Shown here piece after piece: positions 25,428 through 60,859 of a DNA stretch of 64,000 bases (position 1 is its first letter; each line of letters opens with the position of its first letter). Location: IMG/VR virus record IMGVR_UViG_3300043446_005562, positions 186,001 through 250,000 of that record. One strand, written 5' to 3'. Under the pieces are notes generated by a model. That model worked only from the letters and a program-made list of their open reading frames with translations, was not told the origin of the DNA and searched no databases. The position numbers and the translations under genes were made by a program.

Positions 25428-25429
25428 AG

Positions 25430-31142: not shown

Positions 31143-31146
31143 CTTG

Positions 31147-37028: not shown

Positions 37029-37059
37029 GCTATTTTAGTTAATGATATTATACTAAAAG

Positions 37060-37141: not shown

Positions 37142-37281
37142 AAAATAAGGAAAGGGGAAGATGGTTGTGTGGACGACCCCTTTTACGATTGGCTTTACTC
37201 TGCTAATGATCTGCCAACTCCGATGCTGCCAGTCGACCATTAGTCTCAAACTATTGACAGCTCATTCCCCAATCAACCTTG

Positions 37282-37356
37282 TCGGGGTGGCAGGATTCGA
37301 ACCTACGACCTCCTGCTCCCAAAGCAGGCGCGATAACCGGACTACGCTACACCCCG
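37282..37356 (-). tRNA. tRNA-Pro(UGG)
   Basis: CCTGC-TTTGGGA-GCAGG. Confidence 0.95.
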
Positions 37357-37438
37357 AAAATCAATACGCTTTCGCCCCCTGTATGGCGTATTACTGATGC
37401 TTAAGGTCGGCCTTAACCGTTAAGGGAGCCACCAGTTG

Positions 37439-37511
37439 AGCGGATGGCGAGAATCGAACTCGCATCTCCAGCTTGGAAGGCTGGAGTAATAAGCCATTAT
37501 ACGACATCCGC
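37439..37511 (-). tRNA. tRNA-Gly(UCC)
   Basis: CCAGC-CTTCCAA-GCTGG, U73. Confidence 0.95.
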
Positions 37512-37518
37512 TTATTTG

Positions 37519-37591
37519 AGCGGGAGACCGGGTTCGAACCGGCGACCTCAACCTTGGCAAGGTTGCGCTCTACCAACTGAGCTACTCCCGC
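37519..37591 (-). tRNA. tRNA-Gly(GCC)
   Basis: CAACC-TTGCCAA-GGTTG, U73. Confidence 0.95.
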
Positions 37592-37595
37592 AATT

Positions 37596-37776
37596 GGGTA
37601 GGATCAGACGTGTTCTGCCTACTAGGCAGGTCTGCCTACCGAGACCTCGTCGTTAACTTTCGTCAGAGCGTACCGAGACACCATTTGTTTTTCGACTTGA
37701 GGTAGTCACGGCCGCCTCTGGTCCTCTCAAGTCTATTTCGTATCGTGGCAAGATGCGGCTCGACCCTGATACGCTG
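37596..37776 (-). ncRNA. Candidate structured ncRNA between tRNA-Thr and tRNA-Gly
   Basis: Multiple helices, including GACTTGAG/CTCAAGTC and GGTAGG/CCTACC. Confidence 0.5.
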
Positions 37777-37778
37777 TG

Positions 37779-37851
37779 AGCCTCCTGCCGGGATCGAACC
37801 AGCGACCTACTGATTACAAATCAGTTGCTCTACCAGCTGAGCTAAGGAGGC
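37779..37851 (-). tRNA. tRNA-Thr(UGU)
   Basis: ACTGA-TTTGTAA-TCAGT. Confidence 0.95.
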
Positions 37852-37934
37852 AAGATGAACCGTCACAGTGGTTCAGTCTGGTCATTTTCTTCTTCAGTCA
37901 TCGGTAAACCGCGACCTTCTGACGGTGACATCCA

Positions 37935-38011
37935 TGGTGGACCGTGAGAGACTCGAACTCTCGACCCCCTGCGTGCAAGGCAGGTGCTCTAGCCAACTGA
38001 GCTAACAGCCC
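37935..38011 (-). tRNA. tRNA-Ala(UGC)
   Basis: CCTGC-CTTGCAC-GCAGG, G3:U70, CCA. Confidence 0.95.
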
Positions 38012-38017
38012 ATTTTG

Positions 38018-38089
38018 TAGCCCGTACGAGAATCGAACTCGTCTCTCATCCGTGAAAGGGATGCGTCCTAACCGATAGACTAACGGGCC
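38018..38089 (-). tRNA. tRNA-Glu(UUC)
   Basis: CATCC-CTTTCAC-GGATG. Confidence 0.95.
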
Positions 38090-38211
38090 AAATAAAAACA
38101 TAATACTACTTTAATAGCGCTTACCCAATTTTACAACAGAGCGCGTTACCTTGCTAGACCGTTATTGGGCAACGACTTCTAACAATCCTACCTACCCATA
38201 TTATGTTTTTG

Positions 38212-38283
38212 CGGTCCCACCGGGAATCGAACCCGGCACTTTGCCGTGACAGGGCAATATTATAGCCGATTAACTATGAGACC
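38212..38283 (-). tRNA. tRNA-Asp(GUC)
   Basis: TTGCC-CTGTCAC-GGCAA, G73. Confidence 0.95.
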
Positions 38284-38289
38284 TTTTGC

Positions 38290-38480
38290 TCCTTATAAAT
38301 CCTTCCCGTGCACAGAACAAGAAACTGGGGAGACGTTGTTTCTACTTTTATGAAAGGCTTGGGTACCCTCTCCCACCGTTTCGCAGGTTGAAGCGTCCAT
38401 CTCCACGCCGTCCCTGTGGAACTACAGTGGCTGGTTGTTGCGGCATGCTGCGCTGTGATGGAACATTCGCACAAGCATTG
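38290..38480 (-). ncRNA. Candidate structured ncRNA between tRNA-fMet and tRNA-Asp
   Basis: At least five complementary pairs plus a possible pseudoknot. Confidence 0.55.
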
Positions 38481-38482
38481 AC

Positions 38483-38557
38483 TGGTTGCGGGTGCTGGAA
38501 TCGAACCAGCGATCTTTGGGTTATGAGCCCAACGAGTTACCATTTCTCCGACCCGCG
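38483..38557 (-). tRNA. Initiator tRNA-fMet(CAU)
   Basis: C1:A72 mismatch, three G-C pairs in TTGGG-CTCATAA-CCCAA, CCA. Confidence 0.95.
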
Positions 38558-38562
38558 ATGTG

Positions 38563-38633
38563 TTGTCCCGCAAGGATTCGAACCTCAATTCTCTGGACCA
38601 AAACCAGATGTGCTGCCGTTACACCACAGGACA
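38563..38633 (-). tRNA. tRNA-Gln(UUG)
   Basis: TCTGG-TTTTGGT-CCAGA. Confidence 0.93.
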
Positions 38634-38704
38634 ATTTACTATCTCCAATACGTCAAAGAACCTAATTCTCTTTGTATAGAATATTATACTATATTCCAGA
38701 GATC

Positions 38705-38778
38705 TGGCACGAGTGGAGAGATTCGAACTCCCATCAACGGTTTTGGAGACCGGTATGCTACCATTGCACCACACACGT
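38705..38778 (-). tRNA. tRNA-Trp(CCA)
   Basis: CCGGT-CTCCAAA-ACCGT, CCA end. Confidence 0.92.
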
Positions 38779-38782
38779 ATTT

Positions 38783-38859
38783 TGGTTGGAATAGTAGGAT
38801 TTGAACCTACGACCTCATGAGTATCAGTCATGCGCTCTAACCAACTGAGCTATATTCCA
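38783..38859 (-). tRNA. tRNA-Ile(GAU)
   Basis: CATGA-CTGATAC-TCATG, CCA end. Confidence 0.93.
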
Positions 38860-38862
38860 ATT

Positions 38863-38938
38863 TGGTGGTGCGGGGCAGGATCGAACTGCCGACACCAGGA
38901 TTTTCAGTCCTGTGCTCTACCGTCTGAGCTACCGCACC
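38863..38938 (-). tRNA. tRNA-Phe(GAA)
   Basis: CAGGA-CTGAAAA-TCCTG, CCA end. Confidence 0.95.
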
Positions 38939-42699: not shown

Positions 42700-42787
42700 T
42701 GGCGGAGAGGGAGGGATTCGAACCCCCGTTAGCTTTCACTAAAACGGTTTTCAAGACCGCCGCATTCGACCGCTCTGCCACCTCTCC
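42700..42787 (-). tRNA. tRNA-Ser(UGA)
   Basis: GCGGT-CTTGAAA-ACCGT, long variable arm, G73, CCA. Confidence 0.95.
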
Positions 42788-50109: not shown

Positions 50110-50298
50110 TTACTTTACTGTTGGAGTGCAGCATGCAGCAGTATCAGCTTTTGTTGCAGCTGAGTCTACTACGGTCGAGTCAACTTTAACTAGAGTTGAG
50201 TCGGTCGCATTGGCTGTTGCTTCGGTGGTTCCTGTGGTGCAGCTAACTGCGAACATTGTCGCGATAGCGATAGCAAAGATTGCTTTTTTCATAGTCAT
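50110..50298 (-). CDS. Small lipoprotein
   Basis: Signal peptide ending FAVSC; Thr/Ala/Asp-rich. Confidence 0.7.
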   Translation of the reverse strand: MTMKKAIFAIAIATMFAVSCTTGTTEATANATDSTLVKVDSTVVDSAATKADTAACCTPTVK

Positions 50299-50334: not shown

Positions 50335-50739
50335 CTAAAGTTTCCCATTCTTTTTATTTAACTCCCTAATTTGCTGAAGCACCCAGCGCTGAGCCTCGTC
50401 CGCATGTTTGGTGGACTTGTTATTGGCTGTAATTTCATACGGATGATTATCGTAGTTACGGCCATACCTTTCAAAATAGTCATCGTACTTTTCAAAGATC
50501 GGCTGCCTGAAATGAGTGTACTCATGGATCACGGTCGTGACCCAATCCTTAAGCGTCTTGTGCCGCTTTGGATTAAGTAGAATTAGATTGTCTAATTCGT
50601 CGTAACTACCCAAGTAGTCAACTCGAGAATCCAACTTTATGCGTAGAGTTTCAAGATCCGCGAATCTGCTTGGGCCGTACTTTTCAATGCACCAGTCCAG
50701 GGCAAGAAGAGCACTTTTTCTGGAGATAAGCTTAACCAT
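50335..50739 (-). CDS. Zincin-like metallopeptidase domain protein
   Basis: IHEYTH...HPYE. Confidence 0.6.
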   Translation of the reverse strand: MVKLISRKSALLALDWCIEKYGPSRFADLETLRIKLDSRVDYLGSYDELDNLILLNPKRHKTLKDWVTTVIHEYTHFRQPIFEKYDDYFERYGRNYDNHPYEITANNKSTKHADEAQRWVLQQIRELNKKNGKL

Positions 50740-50826
50740 TCGGTACTCTCAATGATTTCTTTATTATTTATTTGGCCCGCTTAGTTGAGACCTCGCTTTA
50801 TAAATAAACAAAAAACTTTTTAGTCG

Positions 50827-51657
50827 ATGGCACTTCTAAAAAACGGATCCTCTGGCCCAGAGGTTTCTAAGCTCCAGTCATTCCTGGGCATCCCAGCGGA
50901 CGGCCAATTTGGTCCAGGTACCGAAGCAAAGGTAAAGGAATGGCAGGCTGCACACGGGTTAAAGGCGGACGGTATTGTTGGAGAGGACACTCTTGCAAAA
51001 ATGCTTGGAACACCGGCCCCAGCGGCACAATCTCAAACGACGATTCCAGCGTCAAGTTTCAAACTGGAAAAATTAAAAGGGCATGTGCCCGATGCAGTCC
51101 TGGCTCAGATTCCTGACACGGCTGCAAAATTCGGAATTACTAATGTTTTAAGATTAGCTCATTTCTTGGCTCAATGCGGTCACGAATCCGGCGGATTTAA
51201 GGCGGTTAGTGAGAACCTAAATTACTCAGCGGACGGTCTAAAAAAGATCTTTCCAAAGTACTTTCCCGGCAATCTAAACGAGTCCTATGCCAGACAACCT
51301 GAAAAAATCGCTAACCGCGTCTATTCTTCAAGAATGGGTAACGGCGACGAGACCTCAGGCGATGGCTTTAAGTTTAGGGGCCGCGGCTACATTCAATTGA
51401 CTGGAAAGTCTAACTATTCAGCATTTGATAAGTTCGTGGACGACGATATCATCGGTAATCCAGATCTAGTATCCACAAAGTATCCATTGGCATCAGCTGC
51501 TTTCTTTTTTAACAATAACGGTCTATGGACGGTTTGCGATAAAGGAGCTGACGATGCAACGGTTACTGCAGTTACCAAACGAGTTAACGGTGGAACCATT
51601 GGATTAGAGGATCGTCTAAAGCACTTTAAGGAGTATTATTCTCTACTAACTACTTAA
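50827..51657 (+). CDS. Endolysin: peptidoglycan-binding domain plus GH19 lysozyme
   Basis: ADGQFGPGT/ADGIVG PG-binding repeats; AHFLAQCGHESGG, FRGRGYIQLTGKSNY, VNGG; late promoter upstream. Confidence 0.9.
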   Translation: MALLKNGSSGPEVSKLQSFLGIPADGQFGPGTEAKVKEWQAAHGLKADGIVGEDTLAKMLGTPAPAAQSQTTIPASSFKLEKLKGHVPDAVLAQIPDTAAKFGITNVLRLAHFLAQCGHESGGFKAVSENLNYSADGLKKIFPKYFPGNLNESYARQPEKIANRVYSSRMGNGDETSGDGFKFRGRGYIQLTGKSNYSAFDKFVDDDIIGNPDLVSTKYPLASAAFFFNNNGLWTVCDKGADDATVTAVTKRVNGGTIGLEDRLKHFKEYYSLLTT

Positions 51658-51671
51658 AATAATTTTAAAAA

Positions 51672-53600
51672 ATGAAGAATTTCTTTGTCGGATTAATAAT
51701 TGTACTTGCCTCTCTGGTTGGGTCCAACCCAGCCTTTGCTCAATCCGGTCCACCCGCTCCAGGCTGGGGGATCTATGCTCTAATCGACACCACCTATCAA
51801 GTTGGAACCTATTCGCAGGGTGTATCCCATGCAAAGATCACTCTTAAGAACAGCGTTACCACAAAATACACAGGTGTTCAGTTTAGACTCTTTTACGATA
51901 AAAACGCGTTTGCCTCTGCCTCAGTTGCACTAATTGGTTCAGCAACGAACCTTGACCTGCAAGCGGTTGACAATAACGCAAACGGTTATGTTACCATTTC
52001 TTTGGTTTACACGGGTAACAGCGCAACCTACACAATACCGGACGGCGAAAGATTTGACGTGACGTTCACTCACGTTGCGCCCAATGCCTTTTTTGGCTTA
52101 GCTTCAATCTCTAACCTAACCTGGTCCGGTGCACAATCATACAGCCAATACGCATCATCTCAACCTGGTCTAGATACCGTGCTTACTCTACACAGCTACA
52201 ACGGGCAATGGTTAAGGGATACCCTAAAATTCCACGGCACATTCACCAACGTTACCGGCTCACCCGCTAAAAACCTAACACTTTCTCTTGAAAAGAAGGT
52301 AAAGGTTGGAGGTACCTGGTCCCAGCACGCTGCCTATACTACGAATCTACAGGGTAAATTTTCAATCGCTGAATTGATTGACACAACCTATTACGATGTT
52401 CGCTTGGCAATCAAGGGCGATACGATGGGAGTTGGTAATGTAATCTCAACCGCTGATGCTCAACTAATTAATCAGTGGATTCTAGGCAACGGTACTCCAC
52501 AGGCCTGGGATTTTTATACTGGAGATATTAACGGCTCAAACGGTTTGACCATCACCGATGCCTATGGAGTTTTTGGTAGAATCTCTGGCCGATTCAACTC
52601 TTGGCCCAATGGCGTAAAGGATCTTAAGTTCTTTACTCAAGCCGAGTACGCTGCAATCACAGGCTCGCCAAATACAAACTACACCGCAACCTATACCGGC
52701 ACAACCAACTTCTACTACAATATTTTACCAGGTCAGCCAGATTCGGTTAATTATTATGTGTTGGTACCGGGCGATGCAAACGGTACAGGCTATCACATGG
52801 CTCGTTTGACACCTATCACGATCCTGCCAACGCCCAATCCCAATTATCCATCTCAATTGGAAAACATAATTGACATGACCGCTGAATACGACTTTCCAAC
52901 CGATCATGTTGAGATCAACATGCCTTCAATTAAGGTTACAGCCGGCAATCTGGTTGAAATTCCAGTAACCGTTAAAACCTTTGGTAAGCAGATCTCATCT
53001 CTACAATTGGGAATGTTATACGATTCAAGCGCTCTTGACTTTAAAGAATTAAGCAATTCGGACAAATCAATGCTGTGGCTCTCTTCAATCAATCCAATGG
53101 ACGGTATGGTTGAATGGTCGGGTTACGATCCATCTGCAAACAAGGACTACATGATTCCGGACGGCTACAATATCTTTACTCTTAAATTCATAGCTAAACA
53201 GCCACAATCAAACTGGTCTCAATCACCACTATGGACAACTCGTAAATTTACGGGCGATGCTAATTCCAAGGACATGAGCGTGACACCAACTAATGGAATC
53301 TTGATTGTTGCAAAGATGGCCGCTCCAATCGGTCCAAACGAGGCCGAGGAGTCAATGATCGTCTATCCTAATCCAACGACCGGCGATTTCAGCGTTAACT
53401 TCACAGTTAAGAACAGCGGTCACGTTACCCTCTACATTCTAAATAACCGCGGTATAGTTGAACACCTAATCTTAGACAAGGACATGCCAGAAGGAAACTA
53501 CGTTTACTCTTCAAACATTTCTAATCTAGCTTCAGGTCTTTACATTGCAACTCTACAGCAAAAAGGAGAGGTGAAGACCTCAAAAATTATTAAAGAATAA
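51672..53600 (+). CDS. Secreted cohesin-dockerin-cohesin protein with T9SS type A C-terminal sorting domain
   Basis: Signal peptide; cohesin-like GVQFRLFYD and LQLGMLYD; dockerin-like GDINGSNGLTITDA; C-terminal IVYPNPTT...SNLASGLY...KIIKE. Confidence 0.75.
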   Translation: MKNFFVGLIIVLASLVGSNPAFAQSGPPAPGWGIYALIDTTYQVGTYSQGVSHAKITLKNSVTTKYTGVQFRLFYDKNAFASASVALIGSATNLDLQAVDNNANGYVTISLVYTGNSATYTIPDGERFDVTFTHVAPNAFFGLASISNLTWSGAQSYSQYASSQPGLDTVLTLHSYNGQWLRDTLKFHGTFTNVTGSPAKNLTLSLEKKVKVGGTWSQHAAYTTNLQGKFSIAELIDTTYYDVRLAIKGDTMGVGNVISTADAQLINQWILGNGTPQAWDFYTGDINGSNGLTITDAYGVFGRISGRFNSWPNGVKDLKFFTQAEYAAITGSPNTNYTATYTGTTNFYYNILPGQPDSVNYYVLVPGDANGTGYHMARLTPITILPTPNPNYPSQLENIIDMTAEYDFPTDHVEINMPSIKVTAGNLVEIPVTVKTFGKQISSLQLGMLYDSSALDFKELSNSDKSMLWLSSINPMDGMVEWSGYDPSANKDYMIPDGYNIFTLKFIAKQPQSNWSQSPLWTTRKFTGDANSKDMSVTPTNGILIVAKMAAPIGPNEAEESMIVYPNPTTGDFSVNFTVKNSGHVTLYILNNRGIVEHLILDKDMPEGNYVYSSNISNLASGLYIATLQQKGEVKTSKIIKE

Positions 53601-53616
53601 AAAAACCAATAAAACC

Positions 53617-53946
53617 ATGTCAGAAGAAACAAACGTACAGGATCAAAATGACGGCACCTGGTCAGGTCTCAAGAAAACCTTGATCGCCACTTTAACTACC
53701 GTAATTACGGGAGGCGGTGTCTGGTTGGGAACCTTCCTTTATGGGGGGCATGAAGAACCCAAGGCCGAGCCAAAAACTGAACAGGCAGCACCAGCTCCTG
53801 CACCAGTTATTGTTAATGTTCAGCAAACTCAAGAGAACACTCAACAACAAAAAGCGGGTGGAACAACAACAATCATCAAGGAAAAGATTGTTGAGAAGCC
53901 AGCAAAGAAAGAAAAAAAGAGCGAGACTGAAGACTCTCCTTGGTAA
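53617..53946 (+). CDS. Single-TM protein with Pro/Gln/Lys-rich extension
   Basis: LIATLTTVITGGGVWLGTFLY. Confidence 0.6.
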   Translation: MSEETNVQDQNDGTWSGLKKTLIATLTTVITGGGVWLGTFLYGGHEEPKAEPKTEQAAPAPAPVIVNVQQTQENTQQQKAGGTTTIIKEKIVEKPAKKEKKSETEDSPW

Positions 53947-53962
53947 AAATACGTAATTTAAA

Positions 53963-54319
53963 ATGTCACTGAAAAAACTCTTAATTGGCGAAAACGCCTA
54001 CGTTAAGGTGGAAGACAAGAATCGCTTCTACTATATGTTACAACAAATGCAGGCCAATCGTTGGAAGATTACAGCGATCGTGTTGGGCCTGTTCTTCTTT
54101 ATTATTTTAGGTATCAATTCAGCCGTTTTCTTTGGAGTTACAATCCAAGAATCATGGAAGGAAATGTTACTAATTTTATTGGGAGCGTTTGTTGGTAATC
54201 TAAACAAGGTTGTTGATTACTGGTTTAATTCAGAAGATCGCGACAAGATGCTGATTCAAAAGGTAGATGAAGAGGACGGAACTTCGCTATCAAACGTAAC
54301 AACAAATAGCCCAGAATAA
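53963..54319 (+). CDS. Two-TM membrane protein (holin-like, uncertain)
   Basis: Two hydrophobic helices, then VDYWF and a charged tail. Confidence 0.5.
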   Translation: MSLKKLLIGENAYVKVEDKNRFYYMLQQMQANRWKITAIVLGLFFFIILGINSAVFFGVTIQESWKEMLLILLGAFVGNLNKVVDYWFNSEDRDKMLIQKVDEEDGTSLSNVTTNSPE

Positions 54320-54320
54320 C

Positions 54321-55040
54321 ATGAAAAAGCTAGCAATACTCTTTGCGCTTTTCCTAAATTCAGCCATGTGTGTTGCTCAGATTGGTTCAATCAAGTCTGA
54401 GCAATACCAAGCTGACTTTGAAAAGAAAATGTCGCTTGACTCTGTGCCCGAATACAAGGACACAATCAAGATTCCCGTGCAGATTCTAAAAATTGGAATC
54501 AGCTCGGATCTTTACGAAATGTATCCAGAATTAAAGGACAAGCGTGTTGGACTTGGTGTTACCAATATTGTGTTGGAATACCTAGAGTACACCAACCGAT
54601 TCGTCTTTACTGAGGATAAGTTGGAGATTAAGGAGCGCATGATTAATCAGTTCAAAGCATCGGACAAGGGATTCACCGAGAACAAAATGGACGGTCGTGG
54701 TAAGATCAAACTTGCAAAATACTTTGTCTATATTGAAGTTTACGATTTTTCGGTGTCAGACGATGAGGTTGTGAAGGTGAACGGCCAATCGCAAACAACC
54801 CAAATTACGAGACTTGGCTTACAGGTTAAATTCGTTGATGCTGAGACCGGCGAAATCATAATGGGCTCAGGACTGGGCGAGGCCAAGACAGTAAAAACGG
54901 TTTCAATCTTGGAAGGTATTGACGATACTGAAATTAAATTTAATCAATCCCATATTGGTATAACCACCAAAAAAGCTTTGGAAACCGCTGCTGCTCGAAT
55001 AGTTAATCGCATGATAAAAAAGGGAATTTTTAAATCTTAA
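54321..55040 (+). CDS. CsgG-like (curli assembly/transport family) protein
   Basis: Signal peptide; LGVTNIVLEYL..TNRF, YFVYIEVYDF, GLQVKFVDAETGEI, KKALETA. Confidence 0.7.
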   Translation: MKKLAILFALFLNSAMCVAQIGSIKSEQYQADFEKKMSLDSVPEYKDTIKIPVQILKIGISSDLYEMYPELKDKRVGLGVTNIVLEYLEYTNRFVFTEDKLEIKERMINQFKASDKGFTENKMDGRGKIKLAKYFVYIEVYDFSVSDDEVVKVNGQSQTTQITRLGLQVKFVDAETGEIIMGSGLGEAKTVKTVSILEGIDDTEIKFNQSHIGITTKKALETAAARIVNRMIKKGIFKS

Positions 55041-56623
55041 TGCATGTCAAGAAAATCATATTCATACTATTTTTAATTATCTCAAATGTTGCAATCGGTC
55101 AAATCAATTATTCATACATTGACCCTTGTACTGGGATAAAGAAAACAATTCAGGTGCCGTCTAACGGCGTGACCGTTACCTATTACGGTCAAATACACAC
55201 ATTTCAACCGACCGATTTTTACAGCGGAGTTTTTGAGAATTGGGCAAATGGCGTTTACGCATCATTCGGCTCCAATAATCCATGCGCAAGCATTGTCGGC
55301 ATGCCAACCGGTCTAACCGTTGCTCAGAGCAGCGCGTTGAATTTTCTAGGAATAATTAATTCGCTCGATGCGGTCAAGGATTTAGCGGGAGGAGGAACGA
55401 ATTTTCTTTCTGGTACAATTGAGAGTACTAAAAAATCTGAAAAAAAGGAAAAGAAAGATGATAATACTAACTCTACTTCTGTTAATGCTGGTGCCGCTAG
55501 CGGTCAAACTGGTAATTCGGCAACATCGCCGCAATCTGGGAATAAAGGCGAAGCTCAATCGGCTGGTGGATCTCAAGGCCAATCTGGAGGCGAGGCTCAA
55601 TCAAGCGGTGGGAGCCAACCGGCTAGCCAAAAGCCTGATCAAACGGGCGGATCTGGATCGGGCCAAGCTGGCGGAGGAAGCGGATCAAACGGCAGCGGCT
55701 CACCACAAAATCCAGGATCGGAAACCTCAGGTGGATCAGCCCAGGGATCAACAACCGGATCAGGTGGACAAACAACTGGCTCGAGTTCAAATAATAGTTC
55801 AACTTCTCAAAATGGGTCTTCCTCTGGAGGAGGCTCACAGGGAGGCGGACAAAATGATGCAACAAAAAAAGTAACCACAACACCCGCTGGGGAATCCAAA
55901 ACGGATCAGCCATCTGGCTCGGGTAAAACCGATCTGGTTGGATCGTCAGTTAATAATGTGCAGCGAGTTGATGCAAAAAACGGCAATCGACCCAATATCA
56001 TAGCCTCAAGCGATTTTGTTGGATTTAATTTTAAAAATTCAGATGTCTCATACGGCGGTAAATTTACCGGAGGCTATACCTCAGCCAGATGGGACGGCGC
56101 TCGAGCTCATGGACTACTCATTGACTACACGACCGCACTAAAGGGTCCAAACATTAGCGGCTTCTATGCATTCATTAAGCCCAAAAGAATTGACCTTATC
56201 TCAACCACGCTAACTCTTGGTCTTGACATAAAAAAATCAATTTACGGAACGATTGCGCTGGGTCAAATGTGGGATATCAACAAGAAGAAAAACGTTAAAG
56301 CTGTTTATCTTTTAACTGGCTCTTACGGTAGTGTCTATGATCAAGCATTCATTGGTACGGCAGCAATTGCGGGCGGCATGTGGGATCTTAAACTCGGTAA
56401 AAGAATTGATGCTAAAATAATGGGTCTCTATGTTTACGCACCGTATGTTAGCTATTACAACGATATTTTGCTAAAGTCGCCTCACGTTGTTTTACCAATT
56501 CTTGGGTGCAATATTAAAATCACAAATAAATTCAAGATAAACATTAACGGTGGTGGCGCTTGGGCTCTAAAAGAAAACACCCTAAATTACACAGTAATGA
56601 TGGGTACCAGATTATTGTTATGA
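55040..56623 (+). CDS. Secreted protein: N-terminal domain, Ser/Gly/Gln low-complexity linker, C-terminal outer-membrane beta-barrel-like domain
   Basis: Signal peptide; about 140-aa S/G/Q tract; alternating amphipathic strands at the C-terminus. Confidence 0.65.
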   Translation: MHVKKIIFILFLIISNVAIGQINYSYIDPCTGIKKTIQVPSNGVTVTYYGQIHTFQPTDFYSGVFENWANGVYASFGSNNPCASIVGMPTGLTVAQSSALNFLGIINSLDAVKDLAGGGTNFLSGTIESTKKSEKKEKKDDNTNSTSVNAGAASGQTGNSATSPQSGNKGEAQSAGGSQGQSGGEAQSSGGSQPASQKPDQTGGSGSGQAGGGSGSNGSGSPQNPGSETSGGSAQGSTTGSGGQTTGSSSNNSSTSQNGSSSGGGSQGGGQNDATKKVTTTPAGESKTDQPSGSGKTDLVGSSVNNVQRVDAKNGNRPNIIASSDFVGFNFKNSDVSYGGKFTGGYTSARWDGARAHGLLIDYTTALKGPNISGFYAFIKPKRIDLISTTLTLGLDIKKSIYGTIALGQMWDINKKKNVKAVYLLTGSYGSVYDQAFIGTAAIAGGMWDLKLGKRIDAKIMGLYVYAPYVSYYNDILLKSPHVVLPILGCNIKITNKFKININGGGAWALKENTLNYTVMMGTRLLL

Positions 56624-57804
56624 GAAAACTTATATTACTGCTAGTTACGGCGATTGCGCTTTCAATTACACTCACGGCTCAGCCTTTTACCTATTCAGGT
56701 TACGTTTACGGCGCAAACGGCCAGGGTCTTCAAAACATTCCGGTCAAACTGTTTGGCAAACGAACTGACCCATACGAGATTAGCTTTCCAACCTACAGCC
56801 CAGCTGGTGCATTTAATTCCGGCACGGTGATTCCATCTTCCGACGACGCGACTCATGGACCCTTTAATATAGGCTTCACCTTTAGCTTCTTTGGTAATAA
56901 CTACACCCAATTCTATGTTGGGTCAAACGGCTGGATTGGTTTTTCTTCTGCTCAAACAACAGGTTATACTGCTCAATACATTCCAAATGCAGGTTCGCCA
57001 AAGAACGTTATCATGGCGGACTGGGAAGACCTCTATCCAGGTTCAGCCAATATCTACTACACAACGGTTGGCACTTCGCCCAATCGTAAATTAATAGTTT
57101 CATTCAATGCAGTGCCGCATTACGGCTGTCGTACTAATCTGCACACATTTCAATTTGTGCTGTACGAATCAAGCAATGTGATTGATGTCTATTATCAGGA
57201 CAAGCCCCTGTGCTCAGGCAATAACTCAACCGCAGGCTTGGTCAATATTGATAATACGAATGTCGTACCGGTTGGCGGCAAGAATGCCTCTGCCTGGTCG
57301 GCGACCAATTACGCAGTTCGATACACGCCAGCCGTGCCGGAAACTTCTTTTTCGCTAAAGGGTACCTATTCAACCAGTGCAACCGGTCAATACACAATAA
57401 ATCCAAATCTGGATGCACAGTCTTATCAATTTGAAATTCGACTAGAATCATTATCGGTTGCATTACCTACACCGACTGATGCGCAATATCCAACCGAGAT
57501 AAGTCTCTATAATATTACGCCAACCTCCAAGCTCTATTACACGATGGACGTCAACGGCGATGGCCGATTCACGGTCACGGATTCATACAATATCTATGCT
57601 CGCATAAATAACAGACCAGGTTTTTGGATCTCTCCAATTGCAGACTATCGAATATTCACACCAGCCCAGTGGACCACAATTAATTCAGGCACCACTGACA
57701 TGAGGGGTACGATTCCCGGTGTTCAGTCAATGATCATCTTCACTCCAACAAACGGTGGTTCAACCAATTTTTATCTGTTGAGAACTGGCATAAAAACACA
57801 ATAA
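56620..57804 (+). CDS. Secreted protein with nidogen-like domain and dockerin-like motif (true start probably 56620)
   Basis: MRKLILLLVTA signal; NIGFTFSFFGNNYTQFYVGSNGWIGF; MDVNGDGRFTVTDSY. Confidence 0.7.
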   Translation: MRKLILLLVTAIALSITLTAQPFTYSGYVYGANGQGLQNIPVKLFGKRTDPYEISFPTYSPAGAFNSGTVIPSSDDATHGPFNIGFTFSFFGNNYTQFYVGSNGWIGFSSAQTTGYTAQYIPNAGSPKNVIMADWEDLYPGSANIYYTTVGTSPNRKLIVSFNAVPHYGCRTNLHTFQFVLYESSNVIDVYYQDKPLCSGNNSTAGLVNIDNTNVVPVGGKNASAWSATNYAVRYTPAVPETSFSLKGTYSTSATGQYTINPNLDAQSYQFEIRLESLSVALPTPTDAQYPTEISLYNITPTSKLYYTMDVNGDGRFTVTDSYNIYARINNRPGFWISPIADYRIFTPAQWTTINSGTTDMRGTIPGVQSMIIFTPTNGGSTNFYLLRTGIKTQ

Positions 57805-57809
57805 CTAAC

Positions 57810-58271
57810 ATGAAAAAACTAATCTTTACCCTATTAATTTTTATCTCAACCCAAGTCACGGCCTTTTCCCAAACTGATCGATGTTTTAGCATTGATACTG
57901 TGTACTCAACTGCAAAGTTTAGAGAATTGGGCAAACGCGATATTAGGTTCGGTGTCAAGCAGATGACCGAGGAATTGATCTCTGAGAAGTTCTGTATTAA
58001 GCCAGGGTCGTCAAGTGTCAAGGTTGAAATATTCTATTTTGGCTTGCCGAGAAAGGAACTTAGGCTGCTTGGAGTTGGACGAGAAGAGGCAATCACGCAG
58101 GTCGGAATCAGGCTGCACATTGATGGTAAAGCATACGAGGGCTATGGCGAATCGGAAACTGAGATTAGAACAATAATGTTGGAGGTGGTGGAAGAGTCTG
58201 TACCTTTTTCCAAAATGACTCTGTCCAATTCCATTAAAAAAGCCCTGGTTCAATGCGTTTCGCAATTATAG
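57810..58271 (+). CDS. Secreted protein, possibly distant CsgG-like fold
   Basis: Signal peptide; FGVKQMTEEL...GESET...NSIKKAL pattern parallels 54321-55040. Confidence 0.5.
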   Translation: MKKLIFTLLIFISTQVTAFSQTDRCFSIDTVYSTAKFRELGKRDIRFGVKQMTEELISEKFCIKPGSSSVKVEIFYFGLPRKELRLLGVGREEAITQVGIRLHIDGKAYEGYGESETEIRTIMLEVVEESVPFSKMTLSNSIKKALVQCVSQL

Positions 58272-58714
58272 CTCTAATCGTTTGGCTGGCAGCTGGCTCA
58301 GCACAGGCTCAAATTCAAATACCCGATGTGGGAGACGGCTGGCGACCAAAGGTCGACTCGGCGATTGCTGTGATTAAGGCCCATGATCCAGTCGCTCACA
58401 AGCGCCTGCTTGAAAACTGTAAATCGATTCAATTCATTATCGCGGGAGAGTCAACCACTCAACCGCCCAGCGTAATTGCAATATCGGTAAACGACATGCG
58501 ATTAAACTCAATCAACAACATTGCTGCCATTCTGGTACACGAGTCGTATCATTTGTACATTGCAAATCAGGGCATAAAGCTTGATCCAAACGTTGAGGAG
58601 TATCAGGCCTACTCAATAGAATATGAATTTTTATTTAAAATTCCTGACCTTGAGGATTGGCTATTCGAGAATGCGCTCAACCGCATGCTCTATTATAAAT
58701 CCAAGATAAAATGA
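58253..58714 (+). CDS. Secreted zincin-like metalloprotease
   Basis: Signal peptide; VHESYH...EEYQAY. Confidence 0.6.
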   Translation: MRFAIIALIVWLAAGSAQAQIQIPDVGDGWRPKVDSAIAVIKAHDPVAHKRLLENCKSIQFIIAGESTTQPPSVIAISVNDMRLNSINNIAAILVHESYHLYIANQGIKLDPNVEEYQAYSIEYEFLFKIPDLEDWLFENALNRMLYYKSKIK

Positions 58715-59496
58715 AAACCTTAATTACATTGGCTTTAATGCTAGCATCAATTGCAGCAGTCGGTCAGACAAGTCCACCTCCACCGCCCAAGGCGCCAGCT
58801 GAGGATTTTGGCAATACTCAAAATAATATTATGGGCGCGCAGGCCAGATCTTTTGGCGGCGGCTCAATAATTAGACCCAACCCAGTGCTGACCTCAGCCG
58901 ATTTTAGTTTCATACAGAATCCAACCTTTGAATCGGGTTGGCGCTATGGTACTGGCTTGGGATACAGTAATGTAAATTTGGGTAAGGGTTATGGTGTCAA
59001 CGTTATTTTGACATTTGACTTGACCCAACAAACCTATTCGGGTTTCTATCGCAATGGAGACTGGTACTTTCATCTCAACTTTGGAAAAATGGGTCTTGTC
59101 AGAAACATTGGCGCAAGCGCAACCAGAGTTTGGGAATTCGATAAAACAACTGTCGGTGTACAGCTTGGAGTATCCGATGTTGAGAGCATGGATTTAAAAA
59201 ATCAGTATTACGTTGCGGTGCCCTATCTTGTTTTTCTAGCGGATCGAGAGATTAGATTAAGCAAAAGACTTGAATGGAAGCCTGAGATTTTCATAACTAC
59301 TTGTTCGCCATACTATGACATTGGTAAAAAATTTAGCAGCACATCCACAACATTCAACGCGGTCGTTGGCAACAACATCTCAATCGCAGTTCACAAGAAA
59401 TTCAGGCTAAATGTTAATTGGCGTGCAAATATGAACACAACTCCAAACTGGGGTGTCATGCACAACATTCTAGTCGGAACAACTTTAAAATTTTAA
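58711..59496 (+). CDS. Putative outer-membrane beta-barrel protein
   Basis: Signal peptide; amphipathic strands; C-terminal Phe (TTLKF). Confidence 0.6.
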   Translation: MKTLITLALMLASIAAVGQTSPPPPPKAPAEDFGNTQNNIMGAQARSFGGGSIIRPNPVLTSADFSFIQNPTFESGWRYGTGLGYSNVNLGKGYGVNVILTFDLTQQTYSGFYRNGDWYFHLNFGKMGLVRNIGASATRVWEFDKTTVGVQLGVSDVESMDLKNQYYVAVPYLVFLADREIRLSKRLEWKPEIFITTCSPYYDIGKKFSSTSTTFNAVVGNNISIAVHKKFRLNVNWRANMNTTPNWGVMHNILVGTTLKF

Positions 59497-59528
59497 ACCC
59501 AGATAAATATTATTAAAAAATAAAGAAT

Positions 59529-60119
59529 ATGAATTACACAAGAGAACAAATTGAAAAGGCGGTCAAGGCCAAGGGTTATGCATGGTTTGAGGGCGCAAAG
59601 GACTATGATGTCAATATTGTTGGTATTAGAAATTCTAGCACCGGCCAAAAGGTCACTAACGTGTTTGATGATCTGTTGACCGTGTCCTATAAATTAAACG
59701 GTGAATGGCACTTTCATGCCTGGGCCGCAACAACCGATCCCGGTAAAAAGGGGGTTATGGAGTATCATAATGCAGCTGGCGTTGCTCGACTGGTTGAGGG
59801 TCAATATCGTGGATCGCATGCAATCGGTCTACACCAGGGTAAGTACGAAGCCCTAAAGCAGGCTAAAAACGTCAAGGTGTATCGCGATGCAAATCGTGAT
59901 CTAACTTACGATGAAACCAAAATTCAGGAAGGAATCTTTGGAATCAACATTCACAAAGCTGGAGCGGACTCAACCTATGTTGAAAACTGGTCAGAAGGTT
60001 GTCAAGTATTTAAAAAGTCAGCGGACTTTGATCAGTTCTTGGCCATCTGTAAAAAATCACAAGCAATTCACGGTAATTCCTTTACCTATACGCTAATTGA
60101 ATCTGCGGACATTGTATGA
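59529..60119 (+). CDS. YkuD/L,D-transpeptidase-like cell-wall enzyme
   Basis: ATTDPG; GINIH...WSEGCQV His/Cys catalytic pattern. Confidence 0.6.
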   Translation: MNYTREQIEKAVKAKGYAWFEGAKDYDVNIVGIRNSSTGQKVTNVFDDLLTVSYKLNGEWHFHAWAATTDPGKKGVMEYHNAAGVARLVEGQYRGSHAIGLHQGKYEALKQAKNVKVYRDANRDLTYDETKIQEGIFGINIHKAGADSTYVENWSEGCQVFKKSADFDQFLAICKKSQAIHGNSFTYTLIESADIV

Positions 60120-60859
60120 GATTAATATTTCTATTACTACTAATTATTCCTATTGAAGCCTTTAGTCAAACTAAGGGCTTCATTTCAATAGGTGGCGATT
60201 GGAATTCAGGTAACTTTCAGTCGATTGGCCTGACACTGCGGTCGGAGATTAAAAAGGACAGTGGCAACTATCAATGGGCGATTGCGCCCAACTTTAGATG
60301 GAGCGAACAGTCAAAGGTTGGTGGAGGAGACCTAAATCTCTATGAGAACGAGCTCTACTTGACAGGTAATTTGACACGATCATTGGTCAAGAGCTGGAAG
60401 GTGATAGGCTTTTCCGAAAACGAAAAATCCTATTTAAGAAAAATAGACTTGCGATCAGCTGCTGGTTTTGGAATTGGGGTTGATCTACTCAATCTAAAAG
60501 GAGTTCGGCTCTCAGTGTCTGAACTTATTCTACCTGAATACTATTGGTCAAGCCTGAACACTGAACTAAATAACTTTACGGTTAGGGGCTCGACCCGATT
60601 CAAGCTTGAGATCAGCGGTAAGATTTTAAAGTTCTCATCAGTCAATCTAATTCAACCGGCCATCTATTCAAGTCGACAGGTTAGCTTTGCGGATAATCTA
60701 AACATTCGCAGTAATTCTTCAATCTCTACCAAGTTAAAGGATCGCTATGAGGTTGGTGTGTTACATACCTTAACCTATCAGGGATATCCCTACTACATCA
60801 ATAAGACGATTGTGCCAATGCAACAGGGCGCATCCATCTTTGTTAAGTGTACTTTTTAA
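60116..60859 (+). CDS. DUF481-like outer-membrane beta-barrel protein
   Basis: Signal peptide; GNFQS, ENEKSYLRKIDLR, C-terminal Phe. Confidence 0.6.
   Translation: MRLIFLLLLIIPIEAFSQTKGFISIGGDWNSGNFQSIGLTLRSEIKKDSGNYQWAIAPNFRWSEQSKVGGGDLNLYENELYLTGNLTRSLVKSWKVIGFSENEKSYLRKIDLRSAAGFGIGVDLLNLKGVRLSVSELILPEYYWSSLNTELNNFTVRGSTRFKLEISGKILKFSSVNLIQPAIYSSRQVSFADNLNIRSNSSISTKLKDRYEVGVLHTLTYQGYPYYINKTIVPMQQGASIFVKCTF

What the first reader, a model, noticed from the sequence alone, without database searches (positions are those of the whole stretch)
51672..53600. A phage protein carrying a type IX secretion sorting signal
Seen: the C-terminal 80 aa (SMIVYPNPTTGDFSVNF...ILNNRG...SNLASGLYIATL...KTSKIIKE) follow the type A CTD consensus (YPNP, G.Y, K.IK). 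Inference: the phage hijacks the host T9SS to display its own cargo. This also fixes the host as Bacteroidota.
Basis: partly seen in the sequence, partly recalled or inferred. Interest (0 to 1): 0.68.

Follow-up and report, generated by a model that had tools for sequence, protein, structure and literature searches.

The report
Phage scaffoldin-like protein with T9SS signal
A 252-kb freshwater jumbo phage encodes an exported protein with two cohesin modules and a genuine type IX secretion sorting tail, so it very probably uses its Bacteroidota host's secretion machine; the general idea is already published, but this conserved protein family and its gene island are undescribed.

Summary
ORF 51672-53600 (+) encodes a 642-aa protein whose last 79 residues match the T9SS type A sorting domain over the full model and above curated cut-offs (TIGR04183 40.1 bits against 23; PF18962 39.4 against 27). 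It is the only such hit in the 252.6-kb phage genome.

The protein has a signal peptide obeying the Bacteroidetes Q-rule. After it come a cohesin (structural Z 12.3), an Ig-like module, a weakly supported dockerin-like module, a second cohesin (Pfam 44.8 bits; Z 13.7), a variable linker and the CTD.

The genome is clearly a phage: portal, DNA polymerase, primase, helicases and 19 tRNAs. Four further lines point to a Bacteroidota host, probably Flavobacteriia:
- 8 of 8 signal peptides follow the Q-rule.
- Shine-Dalgarno sites are absent.
- Homologues occur in cultured Flavobacterium 'immuto' phages.
- The portal is closest to Lak and related huge phages.

The gene heads a conserved ~9-kb island of exported envelope proteins. 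In immuto phages it is split into two genes.

Phage-encoded T9SS cargo and the hijack idea were already published (Bellas 2020; de Jonge 2019). This is therefore a new member of a known kind. Secretion, surface display and any cohesin-dockerin docking remain untested inference.

The parts
51672..51740 (+). Signal peptide (aa 1-23), predicted SPI cleavage AFA|Q, with Gln at +1 (Bacteroidetes Q-rule)
   Evidence: Hydrophobic N-terminus. Q24 is invariant in 36 homologues. Q-rule source: PMC5837995. This is a heuristic; no SignalP was available.
51765..52220 (+). Cohesin module 1 (aa ~32-183)
   Evidence: In the exhaustive VIA-align search of the 24-375 model, the top 13 hits are all cohesins. The best is 3ul4_A: Z 12.3, rmsd 2.9 A, 137 of 142 residues. 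Foldseek gives 4uyq_A at TMt 0.65. There is no Pfam hit, and hhalign against cohesin 2 is not significant.
52221..52421 (+). Ig-like beta-sandwich (aa ~184-250), in the position of a scaffoldin X-module
   Evidence: pLDDT is 80-93. It aligns as part of the CipA CohI9-X-DocII match: 3kcp_A Z 11.2 and 4fl4_I Z 11.6, both with high rmsd. Homologous copies give weak CarboxypepD_reg, SdrD_B and transthyretin hits.
52422..52787 (+). Dockerin-like helical module plus a small beta unit (aa ~251-372). It is the most conserved part of the protein and contains one intact EF-hand-like loop, D285-x-N287...D296
   Evidence: Mean pairwise identity is 73%. D285, N287 and D296 are invariant. The A1 profile hits the ScaB dockerin 4uyp_B at E 0.0065 over its full length. 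Pfam Dockerin_1 matches 4 of 11 homologous copies, best E 9.2e-4, but not this copy. The module recurs at the C-terminus of the 394-aa neighbour and of the immuto lectin.
52902..53315 (+). Cohesin module 2 (aa ~411-548)
   Evidence: PF00963 scores 44.8 bits against a gathering score of 24.1, residues 414-542. VIA gives Z 13.7, rmsd 2.4 A, 122 residues aligned to 6kgc_A. Foldseek TMt is 0.63-0.70 to type I cohesins.
53316..53357 (+). Variable, low-confidence linker before the CTD (aa 549-562); the expected place for CTD cleavage
   Evidence: Mean pairwise identity is 17% and pLDDT is below 50. Cleavage here is inference only.
53361..53600 (+). T9SS type A C-terminal sorting domain (aa 564-642) plus the stop codon
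   Evidence: TIGR04183 40.1 bits against 23; PF18962 39.4 against 27. The model shows seven strands. PDB profile hits are 5jvk_A and 8glj_D.
50827..51657 (+). Endolysin (PG_binding_1 + GH19), 14 nt upstream. The adjacency is specific to this genome
   Evidence: Pfam and phrog_181 at 232.8 bits. It is absent from all six related loci.
53617..53946 (+). Conserved partner: 109-aa membrane-anchored protein with a Pro/Ala-rich linker
   Evidence: 64% identity to immuto gp16 over the first 56 aa. Syntenic in L004, L006 and L008.
53963..54319 (+). Conserved partner: 118-aa membrane protein with a charged C-terminal tail (holin-like, unverified)
   Evidence: 77-80% identity in L005, L006 and L008. One 19-residue window passes my hydrophobicity threshold; a second hydrophobic stretch is seen by eye only. 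No family assignment.
54321..55040 (+). Conserved partner: 239-aa exported protein, CsgG/LpoB-like by language-model features
   Evidence: 60% identity to immuto gp17. The nearest Atlas clusters are all viral, followed by CsgG/HfaB/LpoB families at score 0.94 with 176 shared features. This is a lead only.
55040..56623 (+). Conserved partner: 527-aa exported protein with an N-domain, a long Ser/Gly-rich linker and a C-terminal outer-membrane beta-barrel
   Evidence: The Atlas structure of residues 300-527 gives TM 0.70-0.77 to autotransporter beta-domains, KdgM/OmpL and DUF481. Homologous to immuto gp18.
56620..57804 (+). 394-aa exported protein carrying the genome's only other copy of the Ig + dockerin-like module (aa 270-393); candidate docking partner
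   Evidence: The module HMM scores 164 bits, and there are only two hits in the genome. BLAST links it to the immuto lectin gp13 and gp14. Starting at the ATG at 56620 gives a signal peptide ending LTA|Q.
57810..60859 (+). Rest of the envelope island: two 153-aa exported proteins, a 261-aa exported protein ending in Phe, a 196-aa protein with an endolysin-like domain, and a 247-aa DUF481 beta-barrel
   Evidence: Signal peptides with Q at +1. DUF481 scores 28.5 bits against 21.1. w196 hits phrog_3000 and phrog_33083. Synteny is shown.

Best explanation
P0001 is a phage-encoded envelope protein made in the infected cell and exported in two steps by host machinery. First, the Sec translocon and signal peptidase I remove the 23-residue leader and expose Gln24, which Bacteroidota convert to pyroglutamate. 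Second, the folded protein is recognised through its C-terminal type A sorting domain by the host's type IX secretion system and moved across the outer membrane. The tail is then expected to be cut off in the variable linker, and the mature protein is either attached to the cell surface or released.

The mature protein is scaffoldin-like: cohesin, Ig-like module, dockerin-like module, cohesin. Its most likely job is protein-protein docking on the infected cell's surface. It would bind itself and/or the one other phage protein that carries the same Ig + dockerin-like module, the 394-aa neighbour. In the immuto phages that partner is a C-type lectin protein. This would be part of a conserved phage programme that remodels the host envelope.

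Shown here: the domain content, the signals, the phage origin, the conservation and the synteny. Inferred: actual Sec and T9SS transit, CTD cleavage, surface anchoring, cohesin-dockerin binding, and the benefit to the phage (adhesion, receptor masking or superinfection exclusion).

My confidence is about 0.8 that it is a T9SS-routed exported protein and about 0.3 that it works as a cohesin-dockerin scaffold. The figure of 0.7 stands for the core statement.
For: - **CTD.** It scores above the curated cut-offs, covers the full profile and is C-terminal. It is unique in the genome, and the control genomes give no hit.
- **Retention of the CTD.** All 120 best homologues keep it, with invariant motif residues. 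The immuto gp15 homologue scores 45.4 bits.
- **Signal peptide.** It is present, with invariant Gln at +1 (PMC5837995).
- **Two cohesins.** PF00963 scores 44.8 bits, and the structural searches give Z 13.7 and Z 12.3.
- **Dockerin-like module.** Support comes from the 4uyp_B profile hit at E 0.0065, Dockerin_1 matches in 4 of 11 copies, and an invariant D-x-N...D loop.
- **Split versus fused.** Immuto gp14 and gp15 each have their own signal peptide, while the window has one fused ORF. This suggests the two halves work together.
- **Module counts.** There are exactly two cohesins and two dockerin-like modules in this genome. The complete immuto genome holds exactly two modules and one Pfam cohesin; I count the N-domain of gp14 as a second cohesin only by its homology to cohesin 1 of P0001.
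- **Conserved island.** Exported proteins sit around the gene in six related loci.
- **Phage restriction.** Only one hit appears in 185,579 species genomes, on a probably mis-binned MAG contig.
- **Occurrence.** The gene is found in freshwater, river and estuary metagenomes from about 12 studies, and in four river RNA libraries at 99% identity or more.
Against: - No experiment of any kind supports secretion.
- The host is unknown, so the presence of a T9SS in it is inferred.
- The dockerin assignment is weak. The window's own copy has no Pfam hit, and the mixed module profile finds no dockerin in the PDB.
- The cohesin-dockerin complex prediction gave no verdict (0.10 against a mark of 0.32).
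- The full-length model did not dock the module on either cohesin with confidence.
- The partner proteins that lack a CTD have no evident route across the outer membrane.
- One relative (L003) lacks the CTD and the downstream island altogether.
- Presence in RNA libraries does not prove transcription.
Confidence: 0.7

Rival explanations
1. The protein acts on the secretion system rather than as displayed cargo. As an abundant substrate it competes with or clogs the T9SS. The host then stops displaying the T9SS-dependent gliding adhesins that Flavobacterium phages need as receptors, giving superinfection exclusion or protecting progeny from adsorbing to debris.
For: The CTD is genuine and conserved. 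By title and abstract, phage resistance in Flavobacterium arises through mutations in gliding-motility and T9SS genes (bioRxiv 10.1101/2020.10.02.323337 and PMC9804748), so changing T9SS output would matter to a phage.
Against: A plug would not need two well-conserved cohesins and a dockerin-like module that is more conserved (73%) than the CTD (44%). The conserved partner genes are not explained. There is no direct evidence.
Confidence: 0.1
2. It is a lysis accessory, part of the phage's system for breaching the Bacteroidota envelope (a spanin-like or outer-membrane-disrupting function), co-expressed with the endolysin and a holin.
For: It lies 14 nt downstream of a GH19 endolysin and 16 nt upstream of small membrane-protein genes, in a tightly packed block. 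The island also holds a second protein with an endolysin-like domain (w196). No recognisable spanins were found in the window.
Against: The endolysin is not adjacent in any of the six related loci. Cohesin modules and T9SS sorting have no known role in lysis. The holin and spanin assignments of the neighbours are unverified.
Confidence: 0.1
3. It is a virion component, such as a decoration or fibre protein. The C-terminal domain would be just an Ig-like fold used for binding, and the hydrophobic N-terminus would not be a working signal peptide.
For: Ig-like domains are common on phage virions (cited in PMC6949934). The CTD is an Ig-like sandwich. Some phage structural proteins give false signal-peptide predictions (noted in PMC10367356).
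Against: Eight neighbouring genes all have leaders ending with Gln at +1, which fits real export. The CTD passes the curated family cut-offs over the full profile. No PHROG structural family matches. The neighbours look like outer-membrane barrels and lipoproteins, not virion parts.
Confidence: 0.06
4. It is host DNA: a recently captured passenger gene with no phage function, or an assembly chimera.
For: T9SS cargo genes are abundant in Bacteroidota. One homologue sits in a bacterial MAG bin.
Against: GC content matches the flanks. Phage genes lie on both sides. The same gene and island recur in many large viral contigs and in three independently isolated, fully sequenced Flavobacterium phages. 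The MAG is labelled Sphingomonadaceae and has only this one CTD hit in 3.4 Mb, on a 16.5-kb contig. No close bacterial homologues were found.
Confidence: 0.03

Closest known systems
Phage-encoded T9SS type A CTD cargo of 'Cryophage' (Bellas et al. 2020, PMC7468147) and T9SS sorting-domain ORFs on crAss-like contigs (de Jonge et al. 2019, PMC6949934)
   Same: These are phage ORFs ending in a T9SS sorting domain. Host T9SS hijack and a Bacteroidetes host were inferred from it.
   Different: Those cargos are an endoglucanase, a GH39, a PA14 protein and BACON repeats. In Cryophage they are hypervariable 'flexible' genes. Here the cargo is a two-cohesin scaffoldin-like protein. It is a conserved gene with fixed neighbours across a large clade and across cultured phages.
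Flavobacterium phage vB_FspM_immuto gp14 and gp15 (MW353176; annotated 'hypothetical protein' and 'cohesin domain-containing protein')
   Same: They are homologous over the full length (31% and 30% identity). Both have the CTD (45.4 bits), signal peptides with Q at +1, and the same downstream genes.
   Different: In immuto the gene is split into two, each part with its own leader. The record does not annotate a CTD. The dockerin-like partner there is a C-type lectin protein (gp13). No endolysin is adjacent.
Cellulosomal scaffoldins, e.g. C. thermocellum CipA CohI9-X-DocII bound to an anchoring cohesin (PDB 3KCP, 4FL4)
   Same: The order of modules is the same: cohesin, Ig-like X module, dockerin-like module. 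A further cohesin is attached to a cell-surface anchoring device. Both cohesins match solved cohesins at Z 12-14.
   Different: Sequence identity is 10-20%. The dockerin has only one intact calcium loop and falls below Pfam thresholds. The anchor is a T9SS CTD in a diderm, not SLH or sortase in a Gram-positive. No enzymes are attached. It is encoded by a phage. Binding is not shown.
Bacterial T9SS type A cargo (TIGR04183 family; solved CTDs such as 8glj_D and 5jvk_A)
   Same: It has an N-terminal Sec leader with the Q-rule, a C-terminal Ig-like seven-strand domain with the PNP, G-x-Y and terminal K motifs, and a flexible linker in front of it.
   Different: The gene sits in a virus. The full-length family was found in only 1 of 185,579 species genomes, on a dubious MAG contig.
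Phage-encoded envelope proteins that follow the Bacteroidetes Q-rule in Porphyromonas gingivalis phages (Matrishin et al. 2023, PMC10367356)
   Same: These are phage genes of unknown function whose leaders expose Gln. They were read as adaptation to the host's export pathway and as a means of changing the outer membrane.
   Different: No T9SS signal is reported there. Those are temperate phages of an oral anaerobe, not freshwater jumbo phages.

Membership tests
T9SS type A CTD cargo (TIGR04183 / PF18962) | Match to the sorting-domain HMM above the curated cut-off | tested here: met
   TIGR04183 scores 40.1 bits against 23 over profile positions 1-72 of 72. PF18962 scores 39.4 against 27. The genome-wide six-frame scan gives 43.7 bits.
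T9SS type A CTD cargo (TIGR04183 / PF18962) | Domain at the extreme C-terminus | tested here: met
   The match covers residues 564-642 of 642.
T9SS type A CTD cargo (TIGR04183 / PF18962) | N-terminal Sec signal peptide for entry into the periplasm | tested here: met
   The leader is hydrophobic and ends AFA|Q. It is conserved in character across 36 homologues, with invariant Q24. This is a heuristic; no dedicated predictor was available.
T9SS type A CTD cargo (TIGR04183 / PF18962) | Ig-like seven-strand beta-sandwich fold of the CTD | tested here: met
   The AF2 model has seven strands in residues 563-641 with block-mean pLDDT of about 72-84. VIA gives Z about 9 to Ig/FN3-like domains. The profile hits solved CTDs. 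The fold description comes from PMC11285876 (abstract).
T9SS type A CTD cargo (TIGR04183 / PF18962) | Secretion depends on T9SS components, and the CTD is removed | not testable with these tools
   This needs expression in wild-type hosts against gldK, sprA, porV and porU mutants.
T9SS type A CTD cargo (TIGR04183 / PF18962) | The producing cell possesses a T9SS | not testable with these tools
   The host is unknown. Indirect evidence: Q-rule, no Shine-Dalgarno sites, and homologues in phages of Flavobacterium sp. LMO8. That Flavobacterium has a T9SS is background knowledge.
Cohesin (PF00963) | HMM match above the gathering score | tested here: met
   Module 2 scores 44.8 bits against 24.1, residues 414-542. 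Module 1 has no Pfam match.
Cohesin (PF00963) | Cohesin jelly-roll fold | tested here: met
   Module 2: Z 13.7, rmsd 2.4 A, 122 residues aligned to 6kgc_A. Module 1: Z 12.3, rmsd 2.9 A, 137 residues aligned to 3ul4_A, and the top 13 hits of an exhaustive search are all cohesins.
Cohesin (PF00963) | Binds a dockerin | tested here: inconclusive
   The complex prediction of cohesin 2 with the module plus calcium scored 0.10 against a mark of 0.32, which is no verdict.
Dockerin type I (PF00404) | HMM match above the gathering score | tested here: not met
   The window's own copy matches no Pfam family at E up to 10. Four of 11 homologous copies match Dockerin_1, with best E 9.2e-4.
Dockerin type I (PF00404) | Duplicated ~22-residue F-hand with two calcium loops | tested here: inconclusive
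   Two tandem segments are visible. Only the second has the loop residues D285, N287 and D296, all invariant. The first is degenerate. The A1 profile hits dockerin 4uyp_B at E 0.0065, but the mixed profile A2 does not.
Cellulosome-type scaffoldin system | Cohesin-bearing anchor plus separate dockerin-bearing subunits encoded together | tested here: inconclusive
   This genome has two cohesins and two dockerin-like modules. The complete immuto genome has two modules and one Pfam cohesin, plus the cohesin-like N-domain of gp14 by homology. The second module sits on a separate exported protein. Binding is unproven, and no enzymes are attached.
Phage lysis cassette (holin / endolysin / spanin) | Conserved linkage to the endolysin and recognisable holin or spanin families | tested here: not met
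   The GH19 endolysin is adjacent only in this genome. The neighbours match no holin or spanin family in PHROGs, Pfam or NCBIfam.

The most novel reading that the evidence does not exclude
Freshwater jumbo phages and the cultured Flavobacterium immuto phages carry a conserved ~9-kb 'envelope island' that builds a phage-specified, cellulosome-like assembly on the infected cell. A cohesin scaffold is exported and anchored through the host T9SS. It captures other phage proteins tagged with an Ig + dockerin-like module (a C-type lectin protein in immuto, the 394-aa protein here). Phage-encoded outer-membrane barrels and a CsgG/LpoB-like lipoprotein provide the rest of the machinery. The infected cell's surface would thus be re-tooled for adhesion, receptor masking or superinfection exclusion.
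Probability: 0.25. Interest if true: 0.75.

Novelty: new member of a known kind. Interest (0 to 1): 0.55.

Why it matters
Phages that route their own proteins through a phylum-specific secretion system can change what an infected cell displays to other phages, particles and grazers. Bacteroidota are major degraders of organic matter in fresh and coastal waters.

This case has three things the earlier metagenomic reports lacked:
- The cargo has a recognisable protein-docking architecture.
- It lies in a fixed set of envelope-protein neighbours that is conserved across a large clade.
- It has clear homologues in phages that are in culture with their Flavobacterium host, so the hijack hypothesis can be tested directly.

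The combination of a T9SS tail with Q-rule leaders is also a cheap, sequence-only host marker for uncultured phages.

Tried and rejected
- **Complex prediction.** Cohesin 2 (residues 405-550) against the dockerin-like module (240-372) with two calcium ions scored 0.05 and 0.10 against a mark of 0.32. This is no verdict and counts neither for nor against binding.
- **Profile-profile comparison.** hhalign of the N-domain against cohesin 2 was not significant. The cohesin nature of the N-domain rests on structure only.
- **Mixed module profile (A2) against the PDB.** It found no dockerin; the best hits were marginal and heterogeneous.
- **PHROGs.** No family matches P0001 or most island proteins.
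- **Bacteroidota -7 promoter box TAnnTTTG.** It is not enriched upstream of genes (0.32 per kb against 0.43 per kb), so it is uninformative.
- **Sigma-70 promoter and terminator scan of the island.** Results were no better than shuffles.
- **Word search with the C-terminal half alone.** It returned only 26 short proteins on contigs of 5 kb or less, which are probably fragments. It gave no named bacterial relatives and did not even recover immuto gp15.
- **PDB sequence searches for w196, w394 and w239.** Nothing was found.
- **NCBIfam on the island proteins.** Nothing was found.
- **RNA-library contigs.** They cover the locus but cannot show strand, level or even transcription.
- **Not used.** I did not run the large representative-protein search, because the word search and family scans sufficed. 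I used no alternative genetic code.
Full report
**1. Observation**

- TIGR04183 (T9SS type A sorting domain) scores 40.1 bits (E 2.7e-10) against a curated cut-off of 23. It aligns residues 564-642 to profile positions 1-72 of 72.
- Pfam PF18962 scores 39.4 bits against a gathering score of 27.
- A six-frame scan of the whole source genome finds this one match and no other. The same search gives nothing in 14 control genomes.

In an alignment of 36 homologues at 55-72% identity, the motif residues P566, N567, P568, G622 and Y624 are invariant and K641 is nearly so. The AF2 model shows seven strands between residues 563 and 641. The family profile hits solved CTDs, including the T9SS substrate 8glj_D at E 0.0019.

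**2. Is it a phage?**

Yes. The window is bases 186001-250000 of a 252,618-bp IMG/VR virus record that CheckV rates 93% complete. It encodes:
- a portal, a DNA polymerase, a primase, two helicases, an RNA ligase and a ClpA-like ATPase;
- a GH19 endolysin;
- a topoisomerase II subunit;
- 19 tRNAs.

GC content across the gene matches the flanks.

**3. Anatomy of the protein**

| Residues | Feature | Evidence |
|---|---|---|
| 1-23 | Signal peptide ending AFA, then an invariant Gln24 | |
| ~32-183 | Cohesin 1. No Pfam hit. When residues 24-375 are folded alone (pLDDT 79.8, pTM 0.67), the top 13 hits of an exhaustive search against 48,161 chains are all cohesins. The best is 3ul4_A: Z 12.3, rmsd 2.9 A, 137 of 142 residues | |
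| ~184-250 | Ig-like sandwich | |
| ~251-372 | Helical dockerin-like module plus a small beta unit | see below |
| ~411-548 | Cohesin 2. PF00963 scores 44.8 bits against 24.1. Z 13.7, rmsd 2.4 A to 6kgc_A | |
| 549-562 | Variable linker, 17% identity and pLDDT below 50 | |
| 564-642 | T9SS type A CTD | |

Residues 30-372 align as a block to the C. thermocellum CipA CohI9-X-DocII construct (3kcp_A Z 11.2; 4fl4_I Z 11.6). The rmsd is high, so I take from this only the order of modules.

The dockerin-like module is the most conserved part of the protein, at 73% mean pairwise identity against 44% for the CTD. The evidence that it is a dockerin is weak but points one way:
- The full-length family profile hits the ScaB dockerin 4uyp_B over its whole length at E 0.0065.
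- Pfam Dockerin_1 is the only family matched by more than one of 11 module copies (4 of 11, best E 9.2e-4). The window's own copy does not match.
- Two tandem ~22-residue segments are visible. Only the second has an intact D-x-N...D loop, with D285, N287 and D296 invariant.
- A mixed profile of all module copies finds no dockerin in the PDB.

**4. Relatives and context**

The word-index search found 1,363 proteins at E 0.001 or better. The best 120 are all about 620-658 aa long and 55-99% identical, all carry PF18962, and many lie on contigs of 150-590 kb.

The only cultured relatives are the Flavobacterium 'immuto' myophages: 160 kb, host Flavobacterium sp. LMO8, from the Baltic Sea. In those phages the gene is two genes, each with its own leader.
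- gp14 aligns to P0001 residues 1-373 at 31% identity.
- gp15 aligns to residues 412-642 at 30% identity and scores 45.4 bits on TIGR04183.

This split-versus-fused arrangement suggests that the two halves work together.

The Ig + dockerin-like module also closes two other exported proteins: the window's 394-aa neighbour and the immuto C-type lectin protein gp13. The module counts are as follows.
- The window's genome has exactly two cohesins, two such modules and one CTD.
- The complete immuto genome has exactly two modules and one Pfam cohesin. The N-domain of gp14 would be its second cohesin, by homology to cohesin 1 of P0001.

The downstream genes are conserved in order in immuto, in two IMG/VR contigs, in a 591-kb JGI contig and in a MAG contig. 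They are:
- a 109-aa anchored protein with a Pro/Ala-rich linker;
- a 118-aa membrane protein at 77-80% identity;
- a 239-aa protein at 60-73% identity, with CsgG/LpoB-like features;
- a ~500-aa protein whose C-terminal part models as an outer-membrane barrel;
- the 394-aa module-bearing protein;
- two 153-aa proteins, a 261-aa protein, and a 196-aa protein with an endolysin-like PHROG domain.

In the window, a DUF481 barrel follows the block.

The GH19 endolysin just upstream is not adjacent in any relative.

Among 185,579 species genomes, only one contig holds a relative. It is a 16.5-kb contig in a MAG labelled Sphingomonadaceae, and that MAG has no other CTD hit in 3.4 Mb, so I read it as a mis-binned phage fragment. 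One relative, L003, is truncated at residue 525. It lacks the CTD, and its downstream island is replaced by other genes.

**5. Host**

Five lines of evidence agree on Bacteroidota.
- The T9SS tail itself.
- The Q-rule. All eight signal-peptide proteins of the island have Gln directly after the predicted cleavage site, and so do the immuto homologues and the family. [quoted passage not shown]
- Translation signals. Shine-Dalgarno motifs occur upstream of 3.8% of genes against 7.9% of random 16-mers, and leaders are about 50% A. That Bacteroidota translate this way is my background knowledge.
- The module's cultured relatives infect Flavobacterium.
- The portal's best matches are the LR7565xx huge phages and the Prevotella Lak phages.

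A recent paper describes freshwater 'moraphages' with predicted Flavobacteriia hosts that are sister to the Lak phages (PMC12619734). This genome may belong to or near that lineage; I did not test this.

The gene occurs in freshwater, reservoir, river and estuary metagenomes from about 12 studies. Four river metatranscriptome libraries hold fragments of the locus at 99% identity or more. This is compatible with transcription but does not prove it.

**6. Mechanism**

The best-supported reading has three steps.
- Sec export and leader cleavage expose Gln24.
- The protein folds in the periplasm, and the host T9SS recognises the CTD and moves the protein across the outer membrane.
- The tail is removed in the variable linker, and the protein is either attached to the surface or released.

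All of these steps are inferred from the signals; none is shown.

The mature protein is built for protein-protein docking. The simplest model is a small scaffold in which the cohesins bind the dockerin-like modules of the same protein and of the 394-aa partner (the lectin protein in immuto). The one computational test of this gave no verdict. Partner proteins without a CTD also have no evident way across the outer membrane. I therefore put this part at about 0.3.

What the phage gains is open. Options are adhesion of infected cells, masking of receptors on cells or debris, and superinfection exclusion. Flavobacterium phage resistance commonly arises through mutations in gliding-motility and T9SS genes, so the T9SS-dependent surface matters to these phages.

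The rivals are listed separately with their evidence: interference with the T9SS itself, a lysis accessory, a virion protein, and host DNA.

**7. Comparison with what is known, and novelty**

Phage-encoded T9SS type A cargo and the hijack hypothesis were published for 'Cryophage', with an endoglucanase, a GH39 and a PA14 protein as cargo (PMC7468147). T9SS sorting domains were also noted on crAss-like contigs (PMC6949934). Q-rule leaders were noted in P. gingivalis phage genes (PMC10367356). The kind of thing is therefore known.

I found no report of the following in searches of the open literature:
- this family;
- its two-cohesin scaffoldin-like build;
- the split and fused forms;
- the conserved envelope island;
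- its presence in cultured phages, whose GenBank records do not annotate the CTD.

I file it as a new member of a known kind, with a more novel reading (a phage-built, T9SS-anchored cohesin-dockerin surface assembly) left open at about 0.25.

**8. Limits**

No signal-peptide predictor was available. Only two structure jobs were allowed. There is no experimental evidence of any kind. The host was not identified directly.

Noticed in passing
window 51672-60859 (+ strand block): All eight signal-peptide proteins in this block have Gln immediately after the predicted cleavage site (AFA|Q, CVA|Q, AIG|Q, LTA|Q, AFS|Q, AQA|Q, AVG|Q, AFS|Q). This is the Bacteroidetes Q-rule, and it works as a sequence-only host marker for phages (PMC5837995).
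   Followed up: yes
L001 (MW353176) 6001-7825 versus window 51672-53600: The cultured Flavobacterium immuto phages carry the homologue as two adjacent genes (gp14 and gp15), each with its own leader and separated by one base. The window and all 120 best metagenomic homologues have one fused ORF.
   Followed up: yes
window 54321-55040 and 55040-56623: The 239-aa protein is 60-73% identical across phages and looks CsgG/LpoB-like. The 527-aa protein has a ~190-residue Ser/Gly-rich linker followed by a C-terminal outer-membrane barrel (TM 0.70-0.77 to autotransporter and KdgM barrels). Both are phage-encoded envelope proteins of unknown role.
   Followed up: partly
window 60116-60859 and 58711-59496: There are two more likely outer-membrane proteins. 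One is a DUF481 family member (28.5 bits against 21.1). The other is a 261-aa exported protein with a poly-Pro start that ends in Phe.
   Followed up: partly
window 56560-57804: The longest ORF call starts at a TTG at 56560 and overlaps the previous gene by 64 nt. Starting at the ATG at 56620 gives a 394-aa protein with a clean signal peptide ending LTA|Q, which is the more likely start.
   Followed up: yes
window 59529-60119: This 196-aa protein has no signal peptide. It matches phrog_3000 (E 5e-39) and the C-terminal part of an 'endolysin' PHROG (E 5.7e-16), and is conserved in the island of L004 (80%) and L008 (58%). It may be a second peptidoglycan hydrolase besides the GH19 endolysin at 50827-51657.
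   Followed up: partly
window 53963-54319: This 118-aa membrane protein has a charged C-terminal tail and is 77-80% identical in three related loci but was not found in the 13.8 kb of immuto examined (L001). It is holin-like in shape only; no family matches.
   Followed up: partly
L003 5947-7524: One relative is truncated at residue 525 and has no CTD. Its downstream island is replaced by unrelated minus-strand genes. The record is classed as a provirus fragment, 12% complete.
   Followed up: partly
L008 (RFPL01000028.1, MAG labelled Sphingomonadaceae): This 16.5-kb contig carries the phage island. It is the only TIGR04183 hit in the 3.4-Mb MAG and the only hit for the family among 185,579 species genomes. 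It is most likely a phage contig mis-binned into an alphaproteobacterial MAG.
   Followed up: partly
window 25168-25499, 31146-31224, 37059-38938, 42700-42787 (- strand): There are 19 tRNA genes in four groups, covering 17 amino acids (Leu and Gly twice each). This is a large set, in keeping with a jumbo phage.
   Followed up: no
window 50110-50298 (-) and 22735-22974 (-): Two small ORFs (62 and 79 aa) have lipoprotein-like leaders ending in Cys (…AVSC, …LAAC). The first lies just upstream of the endolysin block. They could be candidates for an outer-membrane lipoprotein role in lysis or exclusion.
   Followed up: no
window 17790-19763 (-): A 657-aa two-AAA-domain ATPase matches phrog_4871 'ATP-dependent protease' at 833.7 bits. 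A ClpA-type ATPase is listed among the core genes of the freshwater 'moraphages' (PMC12619734), which hints at kinship.
   Followed up: no
whole window: Shine-Dalgarno motifs are rarer upstream of genes (3.8%) than in random sequence (7.9%). The 20 nt before start codons are about 50% A.
   Followed up: yes
window 50700-56650: Four river metatranscriptome libraries hold many short contigs at 99% identity or more across the endolysin, P0001 and the island. The gene also occurs in freshwater, reservoir, estuary and one seawater metagenome, so the phage is widespread.
   Followed up: partly
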